Assembly (NCBI GenBank): GCA_053919585.1
Contig: CM132792.1
Reading direction: 5' to 3' (one strand)
DNA length: 64,000 nucleotides
Source of the DNA: Euprymna scolopes
Taxonomy: Eukaryota
Position 1 is the stretch's first letter; every line of letters begins with the position of its first letter. Below are positions 1 to 61,193 of the stretch, piece after piece. The notes beneath the pieces were generated by a model. That model was not told where the DNA came from. It searched no databases and saw nothing but the letters and a program-made list of their open reading frames with translations. Made by a program: the position numbers and the translations under genes.

Positions 1-483
1 ATATAGCATGTATATGAACAGTTTACGTATATATATAAACGAAGGCTTATGGTAACAAGCATTGATTATACCATTTTGCAAATAAATGCAAATAAATTTA
101 TTTTTTAGTGTATATAGATTTATGGACACCGTGTATTTTAATTTACATATTAACGAAATAATAACTACTATGTGTTTAAATTTCAGAGCCCTTTTACTTT
201 AAGTTCACCGAAACAGCTGATGATCCCGGTTTTCTATTTGATAATTTACGTTTATTTCTTATGCTTCATTTCTTTCGTTCTAATATTGCTCAATTCCGTT
301 TTAATATTCACGCAACTACTAAGTATGCATTATGTTTAACGTAGTGCCCATAGGAATTTAAATTGCACTTTTTATTTTATATTACTTCCATTTTTATTTT
401 TAATAAAATGAACGAAGCTTCTTTAGAACTGTCGACTGTCAACACGACGGTCCTAGGTTCAATCCTTGGCTTGGGAGAGATGC

Positions 484-542
484 TAGTCTAGCGGCACTGA
501 TGAGTTGTGATACAACGAAACAGGACTGTATGTCGATGACTA
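484..542 (+). ncRNA. Type I hammerhead ribozyme, copy 1
   Basis: Core CTGATGA (497-503); stem II GTTGT/ACAAC; GAAA (517-520); stem III ACAG/CTGT; GUA triplet (cut after 530); stem I CGGCA/TGTCG plus distal TAGTC/GACTA. Confidence 0.9.
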
Positions 543-810
543 CAAATATATTTTAAGCCCCCCCCACCTCTTTGGGTAGAGCACTGTCGTAAATAATCTC
601 ACCCGCTACTTAATTGACTGAAAAATGCGAAGCTCGTTGTTTGTTGGTTTCCAAACAGGCGTTTTGAGCACTATAAAAGCAGTGGCGGATGTCTATTTAA
701 ATAGACATTCCGACGAGTTATTTGCGGGCGTCGCTTCTGTGGTCGAGTGGGAGAACTGCCGACTGTCAACACGACGGTTCAAGGTTCAATCGTTGGCTTT
801 GGCGAGATGT

Positions 811-868
811 TAGTCTAGCGGCACTGATGAGTTGTGATACAACGAAACAGGACTGTATGTCGATGACT

Positions 869-869
<1 letters not shown>
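811..869 (+). ncRNA. Type I hammerhead ribozyme, copy 2
   Basis: Identical to copy 1: CTGATGA 824-830, predicted cut after A857. Confidence 0.9.
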
Positions 870-924
<55 letters not shown>

Positions 925-1039
925 CTACTTCATTTAATCACATCAAATAATATACGAATGTATAATTTATGCGTAAACTAAGTATTTACTTCATCAGTGC
1001 TCAATAGATAGGTAGAGCTAGGTAGTAAGTTAGAAGAAT

Positions 1040-1368
1040 ATATATGGCAATTAAGCTACATAGAATATTCCGCGTTTCATGCACACTAGGATTCCTCAGG
1101 TTTATGCGAAGAGTTATTGTAATCTCGCGGTTTTATATACGCATATTCTATTGGATTTTTAGTTAGCCAATCAGTTTCCTAGTTTCCACCGCTCCCTTCC
1201 TAATCAGCCAATGGGCAGGCACTTACAGAAAAAAGGTAAAGTTGACTTTATGTTTCACCCTTCCTTTGTGTGTGCTTTTTTAGCAGGGAGTGTAGATATC
1301 TAGTGAGTTGACCTATTTTAAACCTATATGTAGTTAAATGTGTTTTTTGGTTTTTTTTAGTATTATGT

Positions 1369-1447
<79 letters not shown>

Positions 1448-1615
1448 CATAAGATAATTTATGCATATGTATGTTTATTTTATTTATTTAGTTTCTATTG
1501 TTATTGTTAATTTAAAAATTATTTTGTATCGCTATCCTAGAGTAAAGTTTTTCCTGTGAACACAGTTATTCGCTATTTCTCTCCTACAGTTTAATAGCTG
1601 TTGTGGTTCTTTAAT
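1040..1615 (-). mobile_element. Penelope-like element 3' end with degenerate hammerhead (1052-1104)
   Basis: Homologous to 48900-49395. Minus strand reads LLNCRREIANNCVH, resembling the PLE C-terminal LLNxRxE..C.H motif, then CTGAGGA...GAAA...GTA with mismatched stems. Confidence 0.65.
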
Positions 1616-3009: not shown

Positions 3010-3235
3010 CGGCACTCACCTTTAGTGATTTGAACCGTCTTCCTCTGTCACATGTATATCCACATCAGAGGAGATGACCCTACGTTTTTGCAGGTCTTCA
3101 AAGAAACTAACGATGTCTTATTACATATAGCGCCTCTTATTCCAAATTGGTCACTCATCTGCTATTAATTAGCTCAACGTTGCTTAACTTCATTTATCCA
3201 AAGAGAACAGGTGTGTCAACGTGATTATGCTGCGC
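3010..3235 (-). mobile_element. 5S rRNA-derived SINE (SINE3), decayed
   Basis: Reverse complement of 3130-3235 matches the 5S-like head GCATAATCACGTTGACACACC...GAAGTTAAGCAACG. Confidence 0.75.
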
Positions 3236-3470
3236 GTCTACGTGTGTGTATTCTATGATTTATAATGGCACTAAAAGAAAGTGTTTACAATTGATTTCAC
3301 GCATATTTTACGTGCGTTTCAAATGAAATTTTTAACAAATTTCCAACGTGAAGCAAAGAGTCCACTAAATTTTTCCTCTCAGAAAAAAAACACGTTGAGT
3401 CAATTTGCTATGTAATAAAAAACAGAAAAATTATTTTAGCTTCAACGAAATAAACCGAATTAGAACACCA

Positions 3471-4757: not shown

Positions 4758-4823
<66 letters not shown>

Positions 4824-4828
<5 letters not shown>

Positions 4829-5110
4829 GGCATAATCACGTTGAAACACCGGTTCTCGTCAGATCACCGAAGTTAAGCAACGTTGATCCCGGTTAGTATC
4901 AGATGGGTTACCATTTGGGAATGCTAGGCGCTGTATGTACTCTCCGCTTATCTCGGACTTTGTTTTCAGTCGTCCTTTTCTTCACTGGTATTTAACAATG
5001 TCGTCTCAGGAGACGTGTGGTTGGAGATTGCGCACCTCCTGCCACAAAAAATTCACGCGCAAGTAACCCTTCCTGGGTATCCATAGTCTATCCAAGACTA
5101 AAGGAGCCTG
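4824..5110 (+). mobile_element. 5S rRNA-derived SINE (SINE3), head plus body
   Basis: 5S-like ~110-nt head (GATCACCGAAGTTAAGCAACG...) followed by a body homologous to 25670-25835; flanked by (TA)n. Confidence 0.85.
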
Positions 5111-5187
<77 letters not shown>

Positions 5188-17293: not shown

Positions 17294-17432
17294 NNNNNNN
17301 NNNNNNNNNNNNNNNNNNNNNNNNNNNNNNNNNNNNNNNNNNNNNNNNNNNNNNNNNNNNNNNNNNNNNNNNNNNNNNNNNNNNNNNNNNNNNNNNNNNN
17401 NNNNNNNNNNNNNNNNNNNNNNNNNNNNNNNN

Positions 17433-17620
17433 ATATAATTATTTCCACAGCCAGACAACGTCGTAGCTCACAACAGCCAAGAAAGCCAACAAACCGGAAG
17501 CCCAAGATTCGAGTTTCGCCCTCATTTGGGCTCATGAGTTAAACACATTCGAACACGGGATTTGAAGCCCGAGCCTCATGTATGCTAGGCGAGCACTCAA
17601 TCAAAAGAACAAACACGCCA
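17433..17620 (-). mobile_element. tRNA-Ala(AGC)-like head fused to a degenerate hammerhead (17501-17543)
   Basis: Minus strand GAGTGCTCGCCTAGCATACATGAGGCTCGGGCTTCAAATCCCG, then CTCATGA-GCCC(AAATGA)GGGC-GAAA-CTCGAATC-TTGGG. Confidence 0.6.
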
Positions 17621-19902: not shown

Positions 19903-19914
19903 CACGTGGTATTA

Positions 19915-20313
19915 ATTGATTGAGATTGTCGGACTGACTTCCTCACCTTGGTTGTTATTGTCACAACGTTTCGTCAGGTGTTTTGTATCGAACTGGGGAA
20001 CAGTTTGTTAGAAGTCTCGAACCCAACCCTTTATTGTTATTACGGGGGTACCGTGTTCGGACTCCAGCTAGGCTTTGGGGCATAGTTGCTGATTCTCTGT
20101 TTTGAATGTTACTTTTTTACTGCCTTCGTTCAATAATAATAAAGGGTTGGGTTTGAGACTCCTAACAAACGGTTCCCCAGTTCGATACAAAACACCTGAC
20201 GAAGGCCGGAGGGCGAAACGGCCGAAACGTTGTGACAATAACAACCAAGATGAGGAAGTTAGTCCGACAATCTCAATCAATGAAAACACCTCATATCAAA
20301 AATACAGACAATA
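19915..20313 (+). mobile_element. Non-autonomous PLE-type insertion: inverted partial repeat plus hammerhead (20193-20234), 11-bp TSD
   Basis: TSD ACGTGGTATTA at 19904-19914 and 20314-20324; 19915-20042 is inverted versus 20133-20281; CAC-CTGACGA-A-GGCCG/CGGCC-GAAA-CGTT-GTG. Confidence 0.8.
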
Positions 20314-24099: not shown

Positions 24100-24695
24100 T
24101 GGTAAATGTTTTTGTACAGATACTAGTGTTTCGTGATTATGCAATCATCAGTGTAGGAAGTGATGATTATTTCGGGTCTATTTTCAAAGTCACCTTAGGT
24201 TCCCCCATTTTAGTACTCAACGCTTCGCTCAACCAGAATTATCACGTAAAAAGGAAGGGAATTATGTTCTATTTATAATGTCGAGAAAAGCGTCAAATAC
24301 AGAATACGAGTCTATAGTTTTCAGCTACAGACAGAGGAATATTACATTACGCTAAGGTAGACATCTTCTTAATACGCTCTTAAAGAGGCTCAATTCTAGT
24401 TGAAAGGGCTTTATAAGTATTTTATAAAATAATATTAATTATTTTACCAACAGCAGCTAGTGTCCTATGATTATGTAATTATCAGTGTAGGAAGTGATAA
24501 TTACTGCCGGTCGACGGATTCGTATCCAGTCACAAAGTAACCTTTGAGTCTCCCGTTCGGTATTAAACTTATTGGCCAACAAGAATTACCTGTGAAAGGA
24601 AAAAGAATTAAGTTTTCTATTTAATATTGAGACCAATGAACGAATACAGAAAGCTAGGAAAATTCAAGAAGTGTTTAACTGCAGACGATAAATAG
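24100..24695 (-). mobile_element. Old tRNA-headed hammerhead tandem element, ~1.75 units, 334-bp period
   Basis: Core ATCAG ends at 24151 and 24485. Minus strand TACA-CTGATGA..GAAA-CACTAGTA-TC-TGTA. Head end CGAATCCGTCGACCGGCAGTAATTATCAC is homologous to 33826-33855. Confidence 0.7.
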
Positions 24696-25556
24696 AAATA
24701 TGTGTGTAGTAATATATGGAAATTTGCGCATGCGTATGACTCTTTAAATACCTTCCTTTTTTTGTTGTTTTGCTTCCCGATCAAATTTAATAATATTTTG
24801 CAAACCTTTATCGTTTATAACATTTCACAAGAAAATAGGTTGTTAAGAATACATTCTTGCTTACAGGCGAAAGCAATTCGTTTTAGTCATTTATTCTTCG
24901 ATTTCTTTTGCAATAAAATAATAAACAAAGAATCGAGACAAAGGTAAAGATTAGAAAACGATTAAAGCAAATTATAGCTTCTTTCTCAAAAAAGGAGGAC
25001 AAATTCCAATTCAAGAAAATATCTATAACCATATTTCACAAACGCTTGACTATGAGCGGTCTTTATTTATTTATTTATTTATTTTGTTTTTGTTTTTTCT
25101 TTTTGTTCGTTTTTCAAAATAAATGAAACCGTGGCATTTTTGCCAAAATCGCTATTTTATTGGCTTAGGAAATTATTTGCGTCATTATCTCCTTAGAGCT
25201 TAGAGGGATACGAACATTTTAATCGGGAAATTATAGAGAGAATAAATCTAAATACAGAAAATGAAGAAAGAATTTGTTTTGAAATTAGTTTGCTGCCAAC
25301 CGTTTCTTGTTTGTGTCAGTTTGGGAAGACGACGTTTTTTGGCAAAATTGTTGTGCAATTATTCTTAAATTCAGCATTCTTCTATAAATCATCAGACACA
25401 GAAAATTGAACAAAATGTTCTGTAAGAAATACACGTAAAAGCCAACATATACATATATGTATATATTTTAACTTCCTTTAAATTAGACTAATAACTCAAT
25501 ACAGTTAACACACATTATCAAATATTATTACTATAATATTAATTATTATTATCGGA

Positions 25557-25845
25557 TACGGCATAATCACGTTGACACACCGGTTCCCGCTGGATCACCG
25601 AAGTTAAGCAACGTTGAGACTGGTAGTACTAAATGAGTAACAATTTGGGACTTCCAGGTGCTGTATGTGCTCTCGGTATTGTTTCCAGTCGTCCTGGTCT
25701 TCTCCTTGCCACTGGACCCAAACAGTGTCGATTCAGGAGAGGTGTGGTTGAGGATTGCGCAACCCTTGCCTCACAATTACACGCACAACTACCCCTACAG
25801 GGGTATCCTTTGTCTTTCGACACTGAACGGAGGCATCGATCGGTT
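25557..25845 (+). mobile_element. 5S rRNA-derived SINE (SINE3) with structured body
   Basis: 5S-like head 25557-25665; body homologous to 4930-5110; (TTA)n-like tail. Confidence 0.85.
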
Positions 25846-26527
25846 AATTATTATTATATTATTTTGTTATTTTTATTTTATTATTATATCGTTATCGTGA
25901 TATTATTATAAGTATTATTATATTTTAGTGGTATTATAATATTATGTTTTACTGATATTAAATTACTATCAATATGAATTACTAATGTACAAAATATAAT
26001 ATAATTATTTAAGAAATGTTCTTTGTTTTAAAGCCATTTTTATTCATACAATTGTTTCTTTCCACTTTCAAAACATACATAATAAATATAATTTAATATA
26101 AAATTTAATAATAATTGCAAGATGTTTATAACAAATTCAGCGTTTTCATCTAAGTAGAGTATAGAAACAACAAATAATTTCCATTGTTGAAAGACGTGTA
26201 GATTTAATTGTATATGTTTTTTTCTTTTTTCCTTTTTATGTTTTTTATAAAAAAATTTTTTATATAAAATAATCATTTTTTGTTAAAAAAAACTTTACTT
26301 TCTCAAGCAAGTAAAGTACTGAAACAAAAATAATTTTAACTTTTTTATATATATTTTTTTTTAATTAAATGATGTTAAAAAATGAGATGGAACTGATTAA
26401 ATAAAATCTTTTTTTTTAATAAACTTACAAGATTTAATTTGAAATTCATCAAATTTTCAAAGTGGATTTTATAAATTTTACTAAGTAAAATATAAAAATT
26501 GAATTTCAATTTAATCTAAAATTTGTA

Positions 26528-26720
26528 CAGCACACGCACCGGTTCTCGTTAAATCATCGACGTTAAGCAATGTTGCGTCAGGCCAGTACCAGATGGGCAA
26601 CCATTTGGGAAGGCGAGGCGCTGTAAGTACCTTCTTGGAACTCCTCGCTACAAAAGCATCTACAAACGTTGTGGGTCGGCTATGCTCTTCCAGGGGCTCA
26701 AGGCTATGACGGTGGTAATC
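26528..26720 (+). mobile_element. 5S-derived SINE with a different body
   Basis: CACCGGTTCTCGTTAAATCATCGACGTTAAGCAATG...CCATTTGGGAAGGCGAGGCGCTGTA. Confidence 0.7.
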
Positions 26721-26961
26721 TATTTATTTTGGATTTATTTTATCGTGTGTACATTTTGTTGCACCTTTTCAAGGTTTTGAGTGAAAATTATACATCTATA
26801 TCATTAATTACTAAATAATAGAATAATTAAAATTTTTAATGTGAAATCGGATTTTCGACTGTTTCATATTAAAAAGAGAGAGAAAGAGAGAGAGAGACAC
26901 ACACACACTCTCTCTCTCTCTCTCTCACACACACATATATTATTTATTAAAATATAATTAT

Positions 26962-27001
26962 CCACTGACACATGTTTCGTCGTCGACGACTCATCAGATG
27001 G
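26962..27001 (-). ncRNA. Minimal type I hammerhead motif
   Basis: Minus strand CCAT-CTGATGA-GTCGTCGACGAC-GAAA-CATGTG-TC-AGTGG; intact core, GUC triplet, bulged stem I. Confidence 0.65.
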
Positions 27002-27059
27002 CTGAATCTAGCGAGATTCGAAATCGAGATATATATGCTTGTTTAACAATCATTTTAAT

Positions 27060-28183
27060 ACAATGTGTTCTGATGACCTTATAGTACTTATGCCCTATCG
27101 AGGCGCATACTCTCCACCTAGCTTAACAAGCAGCAAAATCCCTCCTCTTCACTGTCGAAATCCTAGATGCAAAAGAAAGGCTTCTAATCTAATAGTTTCT
27201 TCCCTAGCACTGCGAGGATTTTGAAGTCCTTTTCATATTTCCTGCTTTTTTAATTGTATTGACATGCAGAAGTATAAATGTAAAAGGAAAAGACATATCG
27301 CTGCCCAACTCCCCACAGCATTCGGTTAGGCATAATCTTATATAGTAGCCCCTTACTTACAAGTGACAGTACGCCTTGTAATCAACGCTCTGATCCCCAT
27401 CTGGCATCAATTGAAATGAATATCTCTCGTCTTGGGGAGGCCTCATATTTTGACAAGCTTCTGGGCTTGATCTTTACTCCTGATCTGAAATGGAACACGT
27501 ACATCAAATCTGTTGCCACAGCCGCTGAAAAAATGGTGGGATCCTCCTATCGATCCAGTAGATATCTCACTGATGATGCAACTCTCTATCTTCATAAGAA
27601 CCAAGTACGTCCAAGGATGGAGTACTGTTGCCGCATCTGGGCAGGAGCTGCTAGAACGGACTTATCCTGTCTTGATAGAGTTCAAAATAGACTTCGTAGC
27701 CTTGTAGGGGATGTCCTTTTTCTTCCCTTCAACTCTATCTCACAGAAAAGATATAGCGAGTTTGTCTTTGCTTTATCGTTATTTTACTGGCAAGTGCTTG
27801 ATTGAGCTTCAATCTATGGTTCCCCCTCGCCAAACTTTCACAAGAAACACTCGTCTAGCTGAAAACACTATCAATAATTAACCCCCCCCCACTCTTTATC
27901 TGTGCCTAAACCTAAACGTAGATTCCATGAACAAAGCTTCTTTCTTAGAACTGCACGCCTGTGGAACTGTCTTCCGTTTTCCTGCTTTCCAGCTGACTAC
28001 AATATGGTTGTCTTCAAGTCCAATGTAAACAAGTTCTTGATAAGCTGTTCCCTTTAAGTTAATAAATTTACTGAATTTCCATGACTTACAATTACTATAT
28101 TGTCCAAATGACTACTGTACACTATGTAACTCTTATCCTCGAGTGGCCCCTGGACCTTGATAATCGGTGATTCCTATGTAAAT
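27060..28183 (+). mobile_element. Adjacent LINE family B 3' fragment (~27060-27380) and family A 3' fragment (~27383-28183)
   Basis: ORF 27416-27805 (LLGLIFTPDLKWNTYI...RPRMEYCC) is closely similar to 32310-32954. Confidence 0.9.
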
Positions 28184-28310
28184 AAAGAATTATACAAACA
28201 CCGATTAATTTCCAAGGGTTAGTTTGAGTAAATGAGGTTATGCCTATTTCTGTTACACGTCTACATAGTAGGGTCAACAAGATGTCAGATGTCATATTAA
28301 TTCAAAACAC

Positions 28311-31411: not shown

Positions 31412-33060
31412 AATATCCGTGCATGAGGTCGCCAAGCTAATCAAGAACCTAGATTCCAGTAAAGCAACTGGCCCTGATGGCATCCCAATTATAGTGTTAA
31501 AAAAGCTTCAACCAGAACTTGCTCCCATACTTACGAAACTATTTAAGCGCTGCCTTAAGGAGAAGTGCTTTCCGACTCCCTGAAAGACCTCATCAGTTTG
31601 CCCTGTATTTAAGAATTCAGGTGATAAGTCATCTCCCCCTCAGTACAGACCAATAAGTCTCCTGTGTGTTATGAGTAAGTTGCTGGAATCCATATTAAAT
31701 AGAGAAATAGTCAACCACCTCAGCAGAAATAACCTTCTTAGTGACACACAATATGGTTTCCGCTCTGCAAGATCTACCGCAGATGTGCTGACGGTTATAT
31801 CCCACGGGATTAGTGAATCTCTTGACAAAGGCTTCCTTTCTAGGGCAATTGCTCTTGACATATCAAAGGCCTTCGACAGGGTATGGCATAAGGGTCTACT
31901 TCACAAGATTTCCAGCTACGGTATAACTGGAAATGTTTTCTCAATCATTAAATCATTTCTCTCCGATAGGCTCATAAGAGTAGTGGTAGATGGACAAAAA
32001 TCGGAGGCCTGCAATATAAATACTGGAGTCCCTCAGGGATCAATCCTGGGCCCAACTCTCTTCCTGATCTACATCAATGATCTCCCTAAACACATACTTA
32101 AATCATTCGTTGACATCTATGCTGATGACACGACCATCTACGGCAACACATCAAAGGCTGTAAATGACAAAGTTCTCTCTGAGTCTCTCTCCTCTGATCT
32201 CGAGCGTATGGTTCAGTGGGGGAAGATGTGGCTGGTTACCTTTAATGCATCCTAAACCAAACTCCTATCCTTACATCATCAACGCTCTGATCCCCATCTG
32301 GCATCAATTGTGATGGATGGCTCTCGTCTGGGTGAGGCCCCGTGTTTTTACAAGCTTCTGGGTTTGTCCTTTACTCCTGATCTGAAATGGAACATGTACA
32401 TCAAGTCTGTTGCCAAGGTCGCTGGAAAGATGGTGGGATACTTCTACCGCTCCAGAAGATATCTCACTACTGATGCAATTCTCTATCTATATAAAAGCCA
32501 AGTACGTCCAAGGATGGAATACTGTTGCCATATCTGGGCAGGAACTGCTAAAAACAGCCTTTCCTGCCTTGACAGAGTACAAAATAGACTTCGTGGCTTA
32601 GTGGGGGATGCCCTTTTCTCTACCCTGCAACCTCTCTTCCACAGAAGAGACGTTGCGAGCCTATCCTTGTTTTATCGTTATTTCCATGGCAGGTGCTCGT
32701 CTGAACTCAAATTTCTGGTCCCCCCTCGCCAATCGTTCACGAAAAACACCCGTCTAGCTGAATCCACTGTGAAAAACTTCCTCCACTCTATATCTGTGCC
32801 TAAATCAAAACGCGGATTCCATGAACAAAGCTTCTTTCTTAGAACTGCACGCCTGTGGAACTCTGTTCCGTCTGCCTGCTTCCCACTGGACTACAACTTG
32901 GATGTCTTCAAGTCCAATGTTAACAAATTCCTAATGAACTGCCCCCTTAAGTAAACACTTCATCAAATCTCCACACTAACGTAATGTACTTGCAATAACC
33001 CTTATCCCTGAGTGGCTTCCGGGCCTTGATATGTGGTGATCACTGTGTAAAAAAATAAAA
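31412..33060 (+). mobile_element. 5'-truncated young CR1/L2-group LINE (family A), RT domain to poly(A)
   Basis: KATGPDGIP, YRPISLL, QYGFRSARST, LDISKAFDRVWH, GVPQGSILGP and YADD in one frame broken by only two stops (31581, 32253). Confidence 0.95.
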
Positions 33061-33327: not shown

Positions 33328-33498
33328 AGTGTGTGTGTGCGCGCGTACGTGCGTGTGTTTTAACTAGCAAAAAGAACATAAGCCTAAAATATATATATAT
33401 ACATATATATTAACTAGCAAAAAGAACATAAGCCTAATATATATATATATATATATACAGAGATGTCTCGTGTCGCGGGGTTCGAATCGTTCGACTGG

Positions 33499-33572
33499 TA
33501 GTAATTGTGACACCCTGCACTGAAGAATCCCGAAGGGATGAAACACTAGTGTCTGTAGGTATTTAATTATTA
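33499..33572 (+). ncRNA. Type I hammerhead ribozyme
   Basis: Stem I CCTGCA/TGTAGG; CTGAAGA (33520-33526); stem II ATCCC/GGGAT; GAAA; palindromic stem III ACACTAGTGT; GUC (cut after 33553); distal stem I TAGTAATTG/TAATTATTA. Confidence 0.92.
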
Positions 33573-33841
33573 TAGTAAAAAAATAATTATGACAGCCCCT
33601 TTAAGAAATACGTTTCTTATAGTTGAGCACTTTCTGTTGAATAAAAGTCGGTCAATTTAGCTCTTATGCGTAGATCGTCGTATAACGACTTGATCACTGT
33701 CTGTCTGACGTAATGAACATTTAAATTAAAATGTTTAAAATTCAACGCTATTTCACACGATTAATGGTAGCCGAATGGATACGGTCTCCGCTAATCGAGC
33801 CAGAGATGTCTCGTGTCGCGGGGTTCGAATCGTTTGACTGG

Positions 33842-33915
33842 TAGTAATTGTGACACCCTGCACTGAAGAATCCCGAAAGGATGAAACACTAGTGTCTGTA
33901 GGTATTTAATTATTA
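33842..33915 (+). ncRNA. Type I hammerhead ribozyme
   Basis: As above; CTGAAGA 33863-33869, stem II ATCC/GGAT, cut after 33896. Confidence 0.92.
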
Positions 33916-35516
33916 TAGTAAAAAAAAATAATTATATATATATACATATATATATATATAATATATATATTATACATAATATAATATATATATATATATA
34001 TATATATACTAAACTAATCTTGACTCGGTAGGTCAGTATATACTAACGCTATCTATGGAATAGTGAGTATATGGAATTAATGTATAGGCGTGATACTCGT
34101 TATGGAATAAAAATATTTGAAAAAAATTACGTGAATGAACCAAGAATATATATATTTGTTACATAGTAGAAACACTTTAGCGAAAGTATATTAAAATGAT
34201 AAAATAGATAGATAAATTTCTATGTGTCGTTGCAACAGTAAAACAGAAAAATTATTAATTGGCGAATGTTTTATCGTTTTAAGGTGCAGCGAACTACGTA
34301 TTATGGTATCCGTTCGATACATAGTAAGGAATTAAAACAGATTGGTCAGCACAATACCACATTATTCTATAAGTATGGCATAAAACACTTATCATAAGTA
34401 AATGGTTATAACTATTGCTTGTTTTTAACATGACAAAGAGTCTAATGTTTCTATGATATTCAAAGTATTGAAAATATTTTCAAGTAATTGCAATGTTTTT
34501 AAACTGCTAATTACAGAATAAAAATAAAATATATTTTAAAATAGTCTAAGTCGTACAAAACCTAAAGTAAATACGTATGGAAATAACGGCTAGTGCGTTT
34601 GGTCACAGTTACTATGAGAAATTCACTCTAAATTATAAACGAGACTGAAAATAGAATTTACCAACTTAATGGTTTTAATTTCTTCCTTTTTTTCTCAAAA
34701 ATGCGATGAGATGTCACTGTATTGTTTATAATAGCAATCAATTATTGCACTATTTTTTGTTGTGTTCCATTTATTAAACAAGATAGAAGTTATTGTGTGT
34801 TGATAGTTAAGCAATGTTTTTTTTTATATTGGAAAAGAATACAAAACCTTTCTGAATAATTATAATTGTCATAAATTACAAAACGTTGTCAGCAAAACAT
34901 ATTATTAACATAATAAAAGATGTCGAAAGGACAAGAAAAAAACAATTTTATCATATTCGTCATTTTAATGAAAAATAAACCTAAAAATAAAAAGGAGATT
35001 TTCATATTCAGTTGAAACAATAGATGAAATATTCGTGTTATCATTACAAAAAAATATTTTTTATCACGTACATCAATATGTTGGATAAATAAATTAAAAA
35101 GGAAAACATGTAAATTGATGAAGTCGTTTTATTTTGCTTTTGCACATGAGAAAAACATATTTGTTTTCTTTGCAAACGATTCAAATTTGCAATGAAAATA
35201 CGAATAAAAATCTTTTTAAACAATTTGGAACGCCAAAAACGTACAATGTTTGTTTTTTTATTGTATTCGGTTTTATTTATATATGTATATTCGTTTTAGA
35301 AATCTTTACAAATATAATGTAGAAATGTAAAGAAAAGGTGATATACGAAAAGCAATGATTCGAAAAATGGCGATGTAAAAAAAAGAAAATTGCAATTATG
35401 GTTTGGGTTTATTTTTTGGGGGACGAGAAATATTAGAAATATTTGCATACGCAAATGTCTGAAAGCGGGAGTTTGAAATCGGAAACACGGTTTCATCGAC
35501 CGGACAAATTTATCTA

Positions 35517-41949: not shown

Positions 41950-42220
41950 GGATTCCAGAGTTCGATAAGCTTCTTTCTTAGAGCTGCACGCCTGTGTGAC
42001 TCTCTTCCGTTACCCTGCTTTCCAACTGACTAAAATACGGTCGTCTTCAAGTCCAACGTGAACAACTTTTTGACGAGGCAACCCCTTAAGTAATCCAATT
42101 CCCCAAATTTCCACTACTAACGAATACTACGATATTTTCCCATTGACTACTGTACACTCATTAACCCTTATCCTCGAGTGACCTCTGGGCCTTGATAAGT
42201 GGTGACTCCTTTTTAAAAAA
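41950..42220 (+). mobile_element. LINE family A 3' fragment
   Basis: Homologous to 32815-33055. Further copies at ~43200-43470, ~44125-44557, ~49398-49570 (-) and ~60476-60832. Confidence 0.85.
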
Positions 42221-42949: not shown

Positions 42950-44870
42950 NNNNNNNNNNNNNNNNNNNNNNNNNNNNNNNNNNNNNNNNNNNNNNNNNNN
43001 NNNNNNNNNNNNNNNNNNNNNNNNNNNNNNNNNNNNNNNNNNNNNNNNNNNNNNNNNNNNNNNNNNNNNNNNNNNNNNNNNNNNNNNNNNNNNNNNNNNN
43101 NTACAGTAAATAAATGGGGCTTTTGCATTAATAGATGTTGTGAGCTTGTTCCTATCCTATCTTCATTTTCATAGCAAGTGATCGAGTGAACTCCAATCCA
43201 CGGTTCCCCCCTTGGTAAACTTTCACAAAAACACTCGACTATCTTCAACCACTATATCTGATTTCCCACAATCTCTATCTGTGCCTTAATCTAAACGCAG
43301 ATTCCATGGACAATACTTCTTTCGCAGAACTGCCTCTCTGTGAAACACTGTTCCACTGGCCTGCTTCCCGGTTGAATATAACATAGTAGCCTTCAAATCC
43401 AATGTAAACAAGTTCTTGTTGAGCTGTCTCTTTAAATAATCAACTTCTACCCAATTTACACCATTAACGCTTACTAATATATATCCCGAATATGCTTGAT
43501 CGAACAGGGATTAGAGATTAGTAGATAATGCTGATATATTAGTAGCCATTAATCCTAATTTCTTCTCTTTCTAGGAGTCATTACATTTTAAGAAAGATAA
43601 ACCATTCTGAGTTAATCAAGGTAAAATATATGTATGGAAATTTAACGCGTTGATTCTTATCGGGCCCAAATCATCAACTAACCATGATAATCCATTACGG
43701 ATTATCATATAATTATCATTTATAACCACCAGAAAAGCTTCCCCCTTATCATCATAACCACATTAAACGACATTTTATTCATTTATTGTCGTTTCACTGG
43801 ATAGACCTATCTTTGGTTCGACTTGATTACACCTGTGGGTACATTTTTGTCGAAAATGACCTTTCAAGCATCCAACATTTAATTTAGTTTTTGACAATTG
43901 ATCAAATGTGTTGTTTATTCCCATGTAGGTTCATTATATTTATTCAAACAACTTTTTGATATACCTGTTAATCATGTGATGCTGTTGCTTGCATAGTGTT
44001 TCAAGTGCACCTCTTGTCAAAATCATTGTTCGATGCATACGGCCTGAGTATTTAACATGATGTTAGGTTCATGCTTTTAATAAAAATGATTTTTTGGTAC
44101 AACCAATAATTATTTTATCTATCTTCCCTGCAACCGCTTTCCTACAAAAGAGACGTTGCTAGACTATCTCTGCTCTATCGTTATTTTCATGGTAAGTGAT
44201 CGACTGAACTCCAATCTATAGTTCTCCCTTGCCAAACTTTTATTAAAAAACTCAACTAGCTACAATCACTATATACGACCTGTGCCTAAATCTAAACGCA
44301 AAATCCATGAACAAAGTTTTTTTCCCAGAACTGCATGCCTGTGGAACAGTCTTCTGCTGTCATGCTTCTCGGTTGAATGCAATATGGGAGCCTTCAAATC
44401 CAATGTAAACAAGTTCTTGTTGAGCTGTCCCCATAAATAATCAAATTTTACCCAGTTTACATTATAGGCATGACTACACCACCGCCTTACATTCATTAAC
44501 TCTTATCCTCAAGTGGCCTTCGGGCGTTGATAAGTGGTGACTCCTAACTAAAAAAAATGTTGTTTCTTGCATATTGTCGTCAGGGGCACCTATTGTCAAA
44601 ATGGTTCCTCGTTATATACATATAGGATGTTCAAATTATCCCATCTCCACAAGGTACCATTCTTTTCAAATATGATTTTTTTTTTTTTTTTTGCAAATTA
44701 TTGTTTAGTACATCTTGTTCTTTTTTAATTTTAGAAAGTAAAAACATACACAGGTGTTAATATATTAAAAATATAAAGAATAATTATTTTCTTCCAATTT
44801 TAAATTATTTCCTTTCTTTCTACGAATAACATTAATTTTACTTTCTCTCTTTCTCTTCTCTCAGATGATG

Positions 44871-45954: not shown

Positions 45955-46025
<71 letters not shown>

Positions 46026-46074
46026 GGACAAGCATAGATGTAGAATCAACAGATTTGAACTCGTACAAAATCTC

Positions 46075-47436
46075 ATGAATATCTTTGAAACAACCAAAAG
46101 ATATAGCATGATTTTTCCGTCCTTTTTATCCGATCACTTAAGCGTTCCTTCTTCGTCGTCTTTTATAGCCCAGATGGACTCCACGTTCAGCCAAGCGGAG
46201 TCTCTGTCGAGTATGCATGAAAAAAAACAGGCTCGTATGTCGACATCTGCCTCGACGCATATCTCGTTTGCCAGTACTTCAGCTCTCAAAATGAACACAG
46301 ATCCGCCAACAGCTGCTGCTGCTACAGCTATTACTACTCCAACAGCCATCGCCACAAGTTCGACGCACGAAGAAAAATCGAACCCGTTCTTGATAAAGAC
46401 TACCATCACTGGAACCTTCCCAACACAACGATTGCCAATTGGAGAAGATACTGATAATTGCAGCATCTCTAACAACGCAAAAACGATGCACGCTTCTTCT
46501 ATTGTGATCTCTAAATATTCGGATAATATGACTGAAACAATTGCAAATAGGCCGTTCTTTCCCGGAGACGCAACCTTAAATCAAACACACTTTGACATGT
46601 GGCCCCTAAGGATACTCGGTTCGCCAGTCATTTCTAGTCTTAAACCACATATGAACCCGGGCGGGGAACGTTGCCAGTCAACGTGGCTACAGTTCCAAAA
46701 ATCTGCGGAGTATTGGTTTGATTCTGGGGCTCCTGACATCACCGGTGCTAAACAGAACACCCAGCAACAAGTTATCGGCACTCGTCTTCATCACCACAGC
46801 CAGACAACCACAAACACTTCTCCGCGTGATTATCTCATTTGTCCGACCATGAAATCTTATTTCACTGAATCGAATGTTAGTCATCATTACATTTCCGGCA
46901 CTTACCAAACCGAAGCTTTAATGCAGATAAGACCCCGTTTCGATCAGCCTACTGCATTTGGCGCGTACATCAGCCAGGGTACAGTGTCTTCGTCTTCAAC
47001 AGAGCAGGTGAAATCCACCCAGCAGTACTCAAACCGTCGACGTTTAACCGGGCAGTTGTGTTGCGAGTGCCCTAATTGTCGGGATATCGAGAAGCTGGGA
47101 CCGGTTGGTGAACCACTTAAAAACCAACAAATGCATAATTGCCACGTGCCCGGCTGTGGCAAGGTGTACGCCAAGGTTTCGCATCTGAAGGCGCATCTGA
47201 GGTGGCACACGGGCGAGCGGCCATTCGTGTGCAATTGGCTCTTTTGTGGCATGCGTTTCACGCGGTCCGATGAACTACAGCGCCATTATCGGACTCACAT
47301 AAGCGATAAGAAATTCGCCTGCCCTGTGTGCGACAAGCGATTTGAGCGTAGTGATCACCTGAGCAAACATGTCGCGATCCACGGCACGGACGAAAGTGAG
47401 CGAGAGAAGGCCGGAGAAATGAGCAACACAGAGTGA
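46075..47436 (+). CDS. Sp6-9: Sp6-9 (Sp8/Sp9-like) C2H2 zinc-finger transcription factor, divergent; true start uncertain (ATG 46075, 46108 or 46174, or an upstream exon spliced to an acceptor at 46168)
   Basis: Buttonhead box CCECPNC (47059-47079) in the context [22 protein letters not shown], matching Sp6-9 GRATCDCPNCQEAERLGP. Three fingers 47140-47382 include [15 protein letters not shown] and FACPVC; S/T-rich N-terminus; AATAAA at 47718. Confidence 0.93.
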
Positions 47437-48823: not shown

Positions 48824-48885
<62 letters not shown>

Positions 48886-48899
48886 ATTTATAAAATATA

Positions 48900-49395
48900 T
48901 ATGGCGATTAAGCTACACTGAATATTCTGCGTTTCATCCACTATAGGATTCGTCAGGCTTATGCGCGAATTTTGTGGTTGCTTCTTGTTTTTATATATGT
49001 TGAGGATTTCTAGTGCGCCAATCAGCTTTCTAGTATCCACCGCGCCCCCTCCTATCAGCCAATGGGCATGCATTTTATCGAACAAAGGATCTGTTTTAGA
49101 ACTAGGTTAGTGGTTTACGGTAGATCTTTTCCTTCCTTTTTTATATATATATATAAATATACCTATGTGTACACACATATATGCACATATATATCCACAC
49201 ATATATATATATATATACATATATGTGTGATCGTTTATATGTATTTATGTTTATTTAATTTATTTATTTGTTTGTTTTCTATTGTTATTGTTAGTTTTAA
49301 AGCTATTTTGTATCGCTATCCTAGAGTAAGTTTTATTTTGTGAACACAGTTGTTTGCTATTTCTCGTCTACAGTTTAATAGATTTTGAGGTTCTT
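48900..49395 (-). mobile_element. Penelope-like element 3' end / pseudo-LTR
   Basis: Minus strand LLNCRREIANNCVHKIKLTLG*, then two ATTGG, a GC-rich box, TATATAAAAA and a hammerhead. Confidence 0.75.
48909..48961 (-). ncRNA. Type I hammerhead ribozyme (PLE-associated)
   Basis: TAAGC-CTGACGA-ATCC(TATAGT)GGAT-GAAA-CGCAGAATATTCAGTG-TA-GCTTA; perfect stems I and II, GUA triplet. Confidence 0.85.
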
Positions 49396-49584: not shown

Positions 49585-49692
49585 TACATACACCGACTAG
49601 CCTTCCCAAATGGTCACTCATCTGGTACTGAGCAGACTTATCGTTGCTTAACTTAGGTAATCTGGCGAGAACAGGTGTGTCAATGTGATATA
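49585..49692 (-). mobile_element. 5S-derived SINE head
   Basis: Reverse complement matches the 5S-like head; another very decayed head lies at ~52944-53040 (+). Confidence 0.7.
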
Positions 49693-49706
49693 TACAAACA
49701 CACACT

Positions 49707-59830: not shown

Positions 59831-61193
59831 ACACTCCACCACTTTGTTATAATAAAAGAGTTTTTTTGGACTCAATTAGGTTAATATAGTGTAAAAATAA
59901 AAAATATATTAATATTCCCCCTTCTTTTGTTTTATTTATTTTTGTGATTTATCTTTATTTTCATTGCTCAGATAAAAATATATAAATATATTGGGATAAT
60001 ATGTGTGCACAAAGAAGCCATTTTTAATCTAATTGTTTAAGATTCCTTTTGTTTTTGTTTTTTTTTTTGTTTTTTATGTTTTGTTTTGTTTTCATAAAAA
60101 CATACAAATACATACAGATATACATAAACGCACAGTTCTTTACACAAACATATACAGGACGAGTACACATTAAGAGGAAGTCATGACACTTTAAATTCAA
60201 TTGTTTAAATACATAGACATACATATACATATGCATACCTATATACATACAATGTGTGTTTTTTTTTAAAGAATATGGTTTTCTGAAGAAGGAAGTATTT
60301 TCTGTTAGATATGTTTAGTTAATTAAGTTACGAAGACAAGAAAACATGGTGGTAATTTATTGTCATACCCGGGACAATTTACAATCTATTAGTATTTATT
60401 TATTTTTACTTTTGTGTGGTTTCGAATTCTCATTTTAGGTTTCTGAAAATAGATTTATTGAAGATTAAATTCCAAATGGTCCCCCCCGTCAATCTTTCAC
60501 AGGAAACACTCGTTTAGCTGAAAACACTATCAATAATTCCCCCCTCACTCTTTATCTGTGCCTAAACCTAAACGTAGATTCAATGAACAAAGCTTCTTTC
60601 TTAGAACTGCACGCCTGTGGAATTGTCTTCCGTTTTCCTGCTCTCCAACTGACTACAATATGGTTGTCTTCAAGTCTAACGTAAACAAGTTTTTGATGAG
60701 CCGTTCCATATAAGTAAACAAATTTACCGAATTGGTTACTATATTGTCCAATTTCTACTGTATACTCTTTAACCCTTATCCTCGAGTGACCTCTTGGCCT
60801 TGATAATGTGGTGATGCCTGTGTAAAAAAAAAGTTTAAATTTTATCTCTGTTGTCGGTTTAGTAAAAATGTCGGCCATATTATTTTCAGATTCTACATAA
60901 TTTATGATAATAGATTTTTTACTAATTTCATTTCTTATAAAATGATATTTGGTATCAATATGTTCCTACCTTTGTTTTCTTTTCAACCTTCAGAAAACCT
61001 TTCTTTNNNNNNNNNNNNNNNNNNNNNNNNNNNNNNNNNNNNNNNNNNNNNNNNNNNNNNNNNNNNNNNNNNNNNNNNNNNNNNNNNNNNNNNNNNNNNN
61101 NNNNNNNNNNNNNNNNNNNNNNNNNNNNNNNNNNNNNNNNNNNNNNNNNNNNNNNNNNNNNNNNNNNNNNNNNNNAAATAGTATTCCGACAAA

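What the first reader, a model, noticed from the sequence alone, without database searches (positions are those of the whole stretch)
33458..33935. Second tRNA-head + hammerhead family with the same architecture and a 343-nt unit
Seen: the same layout (5'-truncated head-HHR-spacer-full head-HHR) with a different head (long variable-arm hairpin GAGA-TG-TCTC) and a different HHR sequence: 6-bp stem I plus a ~9-bp distal helix, CTGAAGA core, GUC triplet, palindromic stem III ACACTAGTGT. Established: short palindromic stem III sequences allow double-hammerhead dimers in tandem transcripts. Inference: two dissimilar sequences with the same module order, about the same unit length and the same ~1.4x copy structure point to a shared replication mechanism rather than chance duplication.
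Basis: partly seen in the sequence, partly recalled or inferred. Interest (0 to 1): 0.9.

Follow-up and report, generated by a model that had tools for sequence, protein, structure and literature searches.

The report
Hammerhead retrozyme with tRNA-like head
This is a 478-bp non-coding mobile-element insertion, 1.39 copies of a 343-bp unit that joins a tRNA-like promoter-type segment to a self-cutting hammerhead RNA motif; it sits in a (TA)n microsatellite and is a new family of a known kind of element (animal retrozymes, schistosome Sm-alpha), not a new mechanism.

Summary
Window 33458-33935 is 1.39 tandem copies of a 343-bp unit. The repeated part (133/135 nt) differs by two substitutions and a 2-nt A-run indel.

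- **Hammerhead:** each copy has a complete type I core and three helices. Rfam scores it 25.1 and 25.6 bits, below the curated 34.
- **Stem III:** it is the palindrome ACACUAGUGU. A single motif does not fold into the catalytic shape, but the two copies together fold into the double hammerhead.
- **Head:** it carries the only A-box/B-box pair in the 64-kb window, with class-II tRNA spacing. ARAGORN at default settings and Rfam find no tRNA there.
- **Setting:** the insert lies between (TA)n tracts. Family 1 (425-878) has the same layout with unrelated spacer sequence.

Best reading: a 5'-truncated partial-tandem retrocopy of a non-autonomous hammerhead retroelement. It resembles an animal non-LTR retrozyme or Sm-alpha, copied from a circular or uncleaved multimeric RNA, probably by a Penelope-like element.

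This copy cannot transcribe a circle-competent RNA by itself, because its first head lacks the A box.

Not shown: Pol III use, cleavage, circles, other genomic copies.

The scan already noted and followed up many such tRNA-headed hammerhead families on other DNA of this genome. This one is a further family of a known kind.

The parts
33437..33457 (.). Upstream (TA)n tract abutting the 5' end of the insert
   Evidence: Read directly; listed among the (TA)>=6 tracts.
33458..33513 (+). 5'-truncated head: variable-arm-like hairpin GAGA-TG-TCTC, a B box at 33479-33489 and a linker. The A box is missing.
   Evidence: First copy of the direct repeat; B-box match at 33479.
33514..33559 (+). Type I hammerhead, copy 1. 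Stem II is 5 bp with a GAA loop. Predicted cleavage is after C33553.
   Evidence: Rfam RF00163, 25.1 bits over model positions 1-45; core pattern match.
33560..33590 (+). Tail after hammerhead 1: the 3' strand of the distal helix (33564-33573), an A7 run and AATAATTAT. This is the end of the repeated part.
33591..33759 (+). Single-copy spacer, non-coding, with several local hairpins. Its similarity to the spacer of the decayed family at 24119-24452 (-) is above shuffles.
   Evidence: No ORF longer than 42 aa; folds; spacer comparison z about 3 against family 3 and about 0 against family 1.
33760..33843 (+). Full tRNA-like head: A box 33768-33778 and B box 33822-33832, 54 nt apart start to start, with a long variable-arm-like hairpin. 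On its own it folds as a long imperfect hairpin.
   Evidence: Only A..B pair in the window, 0/200 shuffles. Degenerate 84-nt cloverleaf only at the relaxed ARAGORN threshold. No tRNA by default ARAGORN or Rfam. Hairpin fold -30.8 kcal/mol, z -2.1.
33857..33902 (+). Type I hammerhead, copy 2. One G-to-A change opens the closing pair of stem II. Predicted cleavage is after C33896.
   Evidence: Rfam RF00163, 25.6 bits.
33903..33935 (+). 3' tail of the insert (distal helix 3' strand 33907-33916, A9 run, AATAATTAT) merging into (TA)n.
33933..34008 (.). Downstream (TA)n-rich tract abutting the 3' end of the insert
33554..33896 (+). Predicted 343-nt monomer between the two cleavage sites, the candidate linear or circular RNA
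   Evidence: Coordinates from the hammerhead alignment. Circular MFE -75.3 kcal/mol, z -1.3, 63% of bases paired.
24113..24570 (-). Decayed relative of the same lineage (334-bp period) with the same ACACTAGT stem III. One hammerhead core is destroyed.
   Evidence: blastn 67-69% identity; read directly; repeat spacing 334; spacer similarity above shuffles.

Best explanation
The locus is one retrotransposed copy of a small non-coding, non-autonomous retroelement of the hammerhead class. Its closest relatives in kind are animal non-LTR retrozymes and the schistosome Sm-alpha element.

**Unit.** The 343-nt unit runs: about 40 nt of tail, an about 170-nt spacer, an 84-nt tRNA-like head with A and B boxes, a 13-nt linker, then a 46-nt type I hammerhead.

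**Inferred life cycle.**
1. A master array of at least two full units is transcribed. The tRNA-like head may act as an internal Pol III promoter; otherwise transcription reads in from outside.
2. Stem III is too short for one motif, so neighbouring hammerheads pair through the palindrome ACACUAGUGU into a double hammerhead. [quoted passage not shown]
3. A host RtcB-type ligase can close these monomers into circles.
4. A reverse transcriptase supplied in trans copies a circle or an uncleaved multimer, starting at a nick in a (TA)n tract. The most likely source is a Penelope-like element that targets (TA)n. Priming would be on the AU-rich tail about 30-40 nt past the cleavage site.
5. It runs 1.39 times round and stops. 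This leaves a 5'-truncated copy in front of a full one.

**Shown by the sequence.**
- The template crossed the cleavage site twice, and the insert ends beyond it. A cleaved linear monomer therefore cannot have been the template.
- This particular copy has a complete promoter-like head only upstream of its last hammerhead. On its own it could give only a one-cut transcript, not a circle.
- The two copies have since drifted apart by 2 substitutions (one CpG to TpG) and an indel.
For: - Repeat structure and coordinates.
- Hammerhead: full-length match to Rfam type I in both copies. The core pattern is enriched 20-fold in the window.
- Helices: in a 46-nt alignment with family 1 and an unrelated marine hammerhead, 96% of cells pair against 79% in shuffles and 25-52% in slid controls. 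Seven pairs change on both sides.
- Double hammerhead: it is the MFE of the two segments, -34.0 kcal/mol against -11.6 and -9.0 as monomers. Its 10-bp stem III also appears in the MFE of the whole 473-nt transcript, with one of the two stems I, so only one of the two active sites is complete there.
- Head: the only A..B box pair in 64 kb, 0/200 shuffles. A relaxed-threshold cloverleaf has a long variable arm.
- Non-coding, 38% GC.
- (TA)n on both sides. Only 2.9% of the window lies within 10 nt of such a tract, yet the 3' ends of families 1, 2 and 4 all abut one.
- Same architecture in family 1, whose spacer is unrelated.
- Literature: animal retrozymes of 170-400 nt, including about 350-390 bp in a mussel, with RtcB circularisation and dimeric hammerheads where helix III is short (PMC7229834). 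Penelope-like elements form partial tandems and prefer (TA)n (PMC8557442). Retrozymes as derivatives of Penelope-like element pLTRs (bioRxiv 10.64898/2026.07.22.740005). Sm-alpha, Pol III promoter plus hammerhead, where at least two tandem units are needed (PMC6765202).
Against: - Only this one locus and one decayed relative could be examined, so family status in the genome is untested by me.
- The hammerhead scores below Rfam's gathering threshold. It has A-U at the first pair of stem II, where the consensus has G-C.
- The circular monomer is not unusually stable (z -1.3), unlike the highly self-paired circles described for retrozymes.
- The head is not recognised as a tRNA at default thresholds.
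- Absence of TTTT in the unit is not significant: 10.7% of shuffles also lack it. Family 1 has TTTT 21 nt after its cleavage site. That argues against Pol III read-through as a general rule.
- No Penelope-like ORF is in the window. The reverse transcriptases seen are CR1-like LINEs.
- A target-site duplication cannot be read because both flanks are (TA)n.
Confidence: 0.72

Rival explanations
1. The locus is the 3' end (pseudo-LTR or tail) of a Penelope-like element itself: a severely 5'-truncated partial-tandem insertion of an autonomous element, not a separate non-autonomous retrozyme family. The 343-nt period would then be an accident of where the element's tail repeats.
For: Partial tandems, a hammerhead near the 3' end and (TA)n targeting are Penelope-like element traits (PMC8557442, PMC6765202). 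Unchecked earlier notes of this scan describe Penelope GIY-YIG remnants followed by a tRNA-type promoter and a hammerhead in this genome.
Against: The full unit between the two hammerheads is only 343 nt and has no coding remnant. Two other families in the window have the same short period, 327 and 334 nt. That is the size of a retrozyme, not of a 3-4 kb element. No Penelope-like ORF is in the window.
Confidence: 0.12
2. It is an ordinary tRNA-derived SINE whose hammerhead is a fossil without a present role. The 1.39-copy structure arose at the DNA level, by slippage or unequal exchange next to a microsatellite. No self-cleavage or circle takes part in its spread.
For: A and B boxes and an A-rich tail are SINE-like. 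Microsatellite flanks favour slippage. The monomer hammerhead does not fold on its own. A 5S-headed SINE without any hammerhead also sits in (TA)n, so (TA)n targeting does not need the ribozyme.
Against: A SINE copy starts at the head's first base. Here the insert starts inside a head and contains spacer upstream of the full head. The same permuted layout recurs in an unrelated family. The hammerhead core and all helices are intact in both copies, and pairing is kept across families by double changes.
Confidence: 0.1
3. It is a miniature LTR-type element with a Pol III promoter in its terminal repeats, like Cassandra, Helenus or Ajax: 133-nt terminal repeats around a 210-nt core.
For: Two terminal direct repeats of nearly equal size occur in families 1 (127 nt) and 2 (133-135 nt). 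Small-RNA-derived terminal-repeat elements exist (PMC10886601).
Against: Read directly: there are no TG...CA repeat ends, no primer-binding site after the first repeat and no polypurine tract before the second. The A box lies outside the repeat, so the repeats do not carry a whole promoter. Flanks are (TA)n, not a short duplication.
Confidence: 0.03

Closest known systems
Sm-alpha / Sj-alpha SINE-like elements of Schistosoma (Ferbeyre et al. 1998; Laha et al. 2000; summarised in PMC6765202)
   Same: A Pol III-type promoter segment is placed just upstream of a type I hammerhead in a short repeated unit. Tandem copies are needed because cleavage separates the promoter from the downstream RNA. 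The element is non-coding.
   Different: This head has class-II (long variable arm) spacing. Stem III is a 10-nt palindrome that calls for a double hammerhead. Insertion is in (TA)n. Pol III use is untested here.
Animal non-LTR retrozymes (Cervera and de la Pena 2020, PMC7229834), including the about 350-390-bp repeats of the mussel Mytilus galloprovincialis
   Same: A type I hammerhead in every unit; a unit of 170-400 nt; low GC; no LTR, PBS or PPT; non-coding. The predicted products would have the ends that RtcB ligates.
   Different: That paper mentions no tRNA-like or Pol III segment. It describes invertebrate hammerheads as efficient single motifs. This one has the short-helix-III, dimer-dependent design described there for amphibians. 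The circle here is not predicted to be unusually stable.
Penelope-like elements and their hammerhead-bearing pseudo-LTRs (PMC8557442; Cervera and de la Pena 2014; Lunse et al. 2017, via PMC6765202 and PMC7761336)
   Same: A full copy preceded by a 5'-truncated copy; a hammerhead close to the 3' end; a short tail; (TA)n insertion bias; hammerheads that act as dimers.
   Different: No RT or GIY-YIG coding sequence. The unit is 343 nt rather than 3-4 kb. The hammerhead keeps a real, if short, stem III, unlike the minimal Penelope-type motifs.
Newt and axolotl satellite 2 hammerheads (Forster et al. 1988; PMC7229834)
   Same: A weak helix III capped by a palindromic loop, about 330-350-nt tandem units, and efficient cleavage only as dimers.
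   Different: These are vertebrate, reported as Pol II transcripts (PMC6765202), and no tRNA-like head has been described.

Membership tests
Type I hammerhead ribozyme (Rfam RF00163) | Conserved core CUGANGA ... GAAA ... with a U-H cleavage triplet | tested here: met
   Both copies align to all 45 model positions with every core base present and a GUC triplet; pattern match.
Type I hammerhead ribozyme (Rfam RF00163) | Three helices around the core, with helix I open | tested here: met
   Stem I is 6 bp, stem II 4-5 bp, stem III 3 bp as a monomer or 10 bp as a dimer. 96% of cells pair across three hammerhead sequences, with 7 double changes.
Type I hammerhead ribozyme (Rfam RF00163) | Score at or above Rfam's gathering threshold (34 bits) | tested here: not met
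   25.1 and 25.6 bits. The shortfall comes from stem sequences unlike the consensus, including A-U at the first pair of stem II. No core base is missing.
Type I hammerhead ribozyme (Rfam RF00163) | Self-cleavage at the predicted site | not testable with these tools
   Needs in vitro transcription of the monomer and the 1.39-unit constructs.
Animal non-LTR retrozyme | Type I hammerhead in each unit of a 150-450-bp tandem repeat | tested here: met
   343-bp period with two hammerheads. There are only 1.39 units at this locus.
Animal non-LTR retrozyme | Non-coding, GC below 50%, no LTR, PBS or PPT | tested here: met
   Longest ORF is 42 aa within the unit; GC is 37.9%; no TG..CA ends, PBS or PPT on reading.
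Animal non-LTR retrozyme | Many dispersed genomic copies | not testable with these tools
   No tool reaches this genome. The window holds one locus plus a decayed relative. Exact protein look-ups of window ORFs found nothing. Metagenome and viral scans gave no relative.
Animal non-LTR retrozyme | Expressed as linear and circular RNA of unit length | not testable with these tools
   Needs RNA-seq back-junction reads, a northern blot or RNase R.
Sm-alpha-type SINE-like element | Internal Pol III promoter (A and B boxes) upstream of the hammerhead | tested here: met
   A box 33768-33778 and B box 33822-33832. It is the only such pair in the window, with 0/200 shuffles. The motifs are present; promoter function is untested.
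Sm-alpha-type SINE-like element | Head derived from a tRNA | tested here: inconclusive
   No tRNA by ARAGORN at default settings or by the Rfam tRNA model at E<=10. A degenerate 84-nt cloverleaf with a long variable arm appears at 80% threshold. Alone, the head folds as a hairpin.
Penelope-like element derivative | Partial tandem (truncated copy before a full copy) and microsatellite insertion | tested here: met
   the traits are as described in PMC8557442.
Penelope-like element derivative | Sequence homology of the unit to the tail or pLTR of an autonomous Penelope-like element of the same genome | not tested
   No Penelope-like ORF is in the window, and the genome cannot be searched.

The most novel reading that the evidence does not exclude
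In this invertebrate genome (a mollusc, according to unchecked earlier notes), hammerhead retrozymes would be self-transcribing Pol III units. They would have repeatedly swapped in different tRNA-derived heads at a fixed distance from a 46-nt hammerhead: 65 nt from B box to GAAA in two families whose spacers are unrelated. Spread would be through a (TA)n-specific Penelope-like enzyme that copies circles, with a preferred stop inside the head that gives N+0.39-unit arrays. That would be the first system in which promoter, ribozyme and integration preference of animal retrozymes could be dissected together.
Probability: 0.25. Interest if true: 0.6.

Novelty: new member of a known kind. Interest (0 to 1): 0.33.

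Why it matters
Animal retrozymes are known to be highly expressed as circles. How they are transcribed, and which enzyme copies them, is still open; the 2020 review (PMC7761336) says no conserved motif points to a partner.

A family whose unit carries a recognisable Pol III-type A/B-box segment, a dimer-dependent hammerhead, and clean junctions with (TA)n gives concrete, testable handles on both questions.

For genome annotation, loci like this one should be labelled as hammerhead retroelement insertions, not as tRNA pseudogenes or satellites.

As a single locus it adds little. The scan has already found many equivalent families in this genome.

Tried and rejected
- **Spacer homology between families 1 and 2.** A MAFFT alignment suggested shared blocks, but local and global scores are no better than dinucleotide shuffles (z 0.1-0.3). 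I rejected it. Only family 3 is related to family 2 (z about 3).
- **Depletion of Pol III terminators in the unit.** It has no TTTT, but 10.7% of shuffles lack it too, and families 1 and 3 do have TTTT. Not evidence.
- **Unusually stable circle.** z is -1.3. Not supported.
- **Finding other copies.**
  - A metagenome pattern scan gave 5 loci. Only one is a real hammerhead: L004, a single motif at a contig end, with no tandem, no head, and unknown origin.
  - Two viral-contig scans gave nothing.
  - Exact look-ups of ORFs of the window, including a 194-aa RT piece, found none in the protein collection. I therefore did not spend a large protein search on 30-60-aa ORFs.
- **The neighbouring reverse transcriptase as partner.** The RT at 31419-32954 is a CR1-like LINE with an APE-type relative set, and it ends near 33058 like its other copies. 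No link to the element was found.
- **LTR-type reading.** Rejected on the missing PBS, PPT and TG..CA ends.
- **Ferbeyre et al. 1998.** The paper could not be read. Sm-alpha facts are taken from a review (PMC6765202).
Full report
**What is there**

The window is repeat-rich, AT-rich eukaryotic DNA. It holds many (TA)n tracts, CR1-like LINE fragments and 5S-derived repeats.

At 33458-33935 lies a 478-bp insert made of 1.39 copies of a 343-bp unit. The repeated part is 33458-33590 and 33801-33935. These differ by two substitutions and a 2-nt difference in an A-run. One substitution is C33491 against T33834, a CpG-to-TpG change. The other is G33535 against A33878, in stem II.

The insert is bounded by (TA)n on both sides, at 33437-33457 and 33933-34008.

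**The hammerhead**

Both copies align over the whole Rfam type I hammerhead model, at 33514-33559 and 33857-33902. Scores are 25.1 and 25.6 bits, with E about 1e-3 in a 751-nt search. Rfam's curated threshold is 34 bits.

Every core base is present: CUGAAGA, GAAA and the GUC triplet. The shortfall comes from stem sequences unlike the consensus, including an A-U pair where stem II usually starts with G-C.

Predicted cleavage is after C33553 and C33896.

The simple core pattern occurs 11 times in the window against 0.54 expected.

I aligned the 46-nt motif with that of family 1 (491-536, 818-863) and with an unrelated hammerhead of the same format from a marine metagenome contig. The three helices pair in 96% of cells, against 79% in shuffles and 25-52% when partners are slid. 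Seven pairs change on both sides, including all five of stem II. This rests on only four distinct rows, and the structure was read from these same sequences.

**Dimer dependence**

Stem III is the 10-nt palindrome ACACUAGUGU. As a single motif this allows 3 bp and a tetraloop. The minimum-energy fold of one motif is not the catalytic fold, because the 5' strand of stem I and part of the core pair with the 3' half of stem III.

Two motifs together fold, as their minimum-energy structure, into the classical double hammerhead. It has a 10-bp shared stem III and stems I formed crosswise. The energy is -34.0 kcal/mol, against -11.6 and -9.0 for the separate monomers.

In the fold of the whole natural transcript 33458-33930, the same 10-bp stem III (33543-33552 with 33886-33895) and one crosswise stem I (33514-33519 with 33897-33902) are part of the minimum-energy structure.

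A 10-bp distal helix beyond an internal loop of stem I is also predicted (33841-33850 with 33907-33916). Its 5' strand overlaps the base of the head hairpin, so the two folds compete. Whether that matters is inference only.

**The head**

The full head (about 33760-33843) has an A box (33768-33778, 10 of 11 consensus positions) and a B box (33822-33832, 10 of 11). They are 54 nt apart, the spacing of tRNAs with a long variable arm. The box consensus sequences are from my own knowledge.

This is the only A..B pair in the 64-kb window, and none occurred in 200 shuffles.

The head does not test as a tRNA:
- ARAGORN at default settings finds none.
- The Rfam tRNA model gives nothing even at E<=10 in a 111-nt search.
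- Only ARAGORN at 80% threshold draws a degenerate 84-nt cloverleaf, with a good D arm, a long variable arm, and poor anticodon, T and acceptor stems.

Alone, the head prefers a long imperfect hairpin (-30.8 kcal/mol, z -2.1). The head of family 1 does not do this.

So "tRNA-like, probably tRNA-derived" is fair. "tRNA head" as a fact is not. The first, truncated head keeps the B box but lacks the A box.

**Comparison within the window**

Family 1 (425-878) has the same layout: a 127-nt repeated part, a 327-bp period, 454 bp in all (1.39 units), and a 3' end running into (TA)n.

Its spacer is no more similar to that of family 2 than shuffled sequence (z 0.1-0.3). Its head 5' half is unrelated (15 of 70 identities). 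Yet the span from B box to GAAA is 65 nt in both, and the hammerhead is 46 nt in both.

A decayed element at 24113-24570 (-), with a 334-bp period, is a true relative of family 2. Evidence: 67-69% identity around head and hammerhead, the same ACACTAGT stem III, and spacer similarity above shuffles with z about 3.

Other hammerhead-bearing pieces of other families also end next to microsatellites.

Only 2.9% of the window lies within 10 nt of a (TA)>=6 tract. The repeated abutment of element 3' ends to such tracts is therefore not chance. A 5S-derived SINE without a hammerhead sits between two long (TA)n tracts as well. (TA)n targeting thus belongs to the copying enzyme, not to the ribozyme.

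**How it most likely works**

The insert crosses the predicted cleavage site twice and ends 30-40 nt beyond it. A cleaved linear monomer therefore cannot have been the template. The template was a circle or an uncleaved multimer. This follows directly from the sequence.

The arrangement "5'-truncated copy in front of a full copy", a short tail and a (TA)n insertion bias are published features of Penelope-like elements (PMC8557442). A 2026 preprint argues that animal retrozymes derive from their pseudo-LTRs (10.64898/2026.07.22.740005).

The inferred cycle has four steps:
1. Transcription of a master array.
2. Double-hammerhead cleavage.
3. Ligation by an RtcB-type ligase (PMC7229834).
4. Target-primed reverse transcription at a nick in (TA)n by a Penelope-like enzyme, with 5' truncation.

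This copy has a full promoter-like head only before its last hammerhead. By itself it can give a singly cut transcript, not a circle. The first TTTT downstream is at 34269.

The Pol III role of the head is plausible by analogy with Sm-alpha (PMC6765202). I give it about 0.4, for three reasons:
- The lack of TTTT in the unit is not significant.
- Family 1 carries TTTT just after its hammerhead.
- No transcription data exist.

**What is known, and novelty**

All three ingredients are published: animal non-LTR retrozymes, Sm-alpha-type promoter-plus-hammerhead units, and Penelope-type partial tandems in (TA)n.

I found no paper that describes tRNA-like heads in retrozymes outside flatworms. The 2020 retrozyme paper mentions neither Pol III nor SINEs, and tRNA only in other contexts such as tRNA ligases.

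This scan, however, has already noted and followed up many tRNA-headed hammerhead families in (TA)n on other DNA of this same genome, which those notes call a 5.9-Gb mollusc. I could not check that taxon. The LINE protein only says metazoan.

The locus is therefore a new family of a known kind. Its particular features are a class-II-like head and a perfectly palindromic stem III.

**Unexplained**

Families 1 and 2 both have 1.39 units (478/343 and 454/327). With random 5' truncation, a match this close has a probability of roughly 0.02-0.05. The 5' and 3' offsets from the cleavage sites differ individually (96 and 39 nt against 106 and 21 nt), and family 3 does not share the truncation point. 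I lean towards coincidence. A preferred stop of reverse transcription inside the head is not excluded, and it can be tested genome-wide.

**Limits**

None of my tools can search this genome. Copy number, covariation within the family, and the partner element all remain untested here.

Noticed in passing
window 4823-5111 (+); also 25554-25818 (+), 26521-26630 (+), 3122-3237 (-), 49585-49701 (-): A dispersed family with a 5S rRNA-like head (Rfam 5S, 31-77 bits) and a shared about 150-nt body, that is, a 5S-derived SINE. The copy at 4823-5111 sits exactly between two long (TA)n tracts and has no hammerhead.
   Followed up: partly
window 425-878 (+): Family 1: a 327-bp unit, 1.39 copies, with a different tRNA-like head and hammerhead. 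A possible imperfect target-site duplication (about 408-425 and 922-937) would place the (TA)n at 873-922 inside the insertion, as a tail rather than as the target.
   Followed up: partly
window 1023-1611 and 48881-49395 (hammerhead on the - strand at 1074-1099 and 48931-48956): Two copies (76-79% identical) of a 515-590-bp non-coding element. It has a minimal, Penelope-type hammerhead about 50-75 nt from its 3' end. One copy ends in (TA)n (48827-48882).
   Followed up: partly
window 26961-27030 (-): A solo, 5'-truncated piece of another family: a T-arm-like GATTTCGAATC, then a hammerhead with a palindromic stem II 28 nt later, bounded by microsatellites.
   Followed up: no
window 19903-20290: An inverted-repeat (hairpin) insertion starting right after (TA)n. 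The right arm carries a hammerhead core with an inserted stem II that the left arm lacks. This matches the inverted 5'-truncated copies described for Penelope-like elements.
   Followed up: no
window 17500-17620 (-): A tRNA-Ala-like 3' half followed by a variant hammerhead-like motif, next to an N gap (17294-17432).
   Followed up: no
window 31419-33058 (+) and about 10 other places (e.g. 27381-28186, 60476-60830, 41967-42220, 44122-44556): CR1-like LINE fragments (RVT_1 domain) that all end at the same 3' point. One ends about 400 bp upstream of the retrozyme, followed by (TG)n.
   Followed up: partly
window 33363-33457: A 50-nt tandem duplication (28 nt of unique sequence plus (TA)n, twice) directly upstream of the insert. 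Its origin is unknown.
   Followed up: no
L004 3-48 (marine metagenome contig Ga0115011_10094104): A single type I hammerhead with the same 46-nt format and the identical ACACUAGUGU stem III, at the very end of a 2.1-kb contig of unknown origin. There is no tandem repeat and no head.
   Followed up: partly
window 46024-47436 (+): A 470-aa open frame with C2H2 zinc fingers at its C-terminal end.
   Followed up: no
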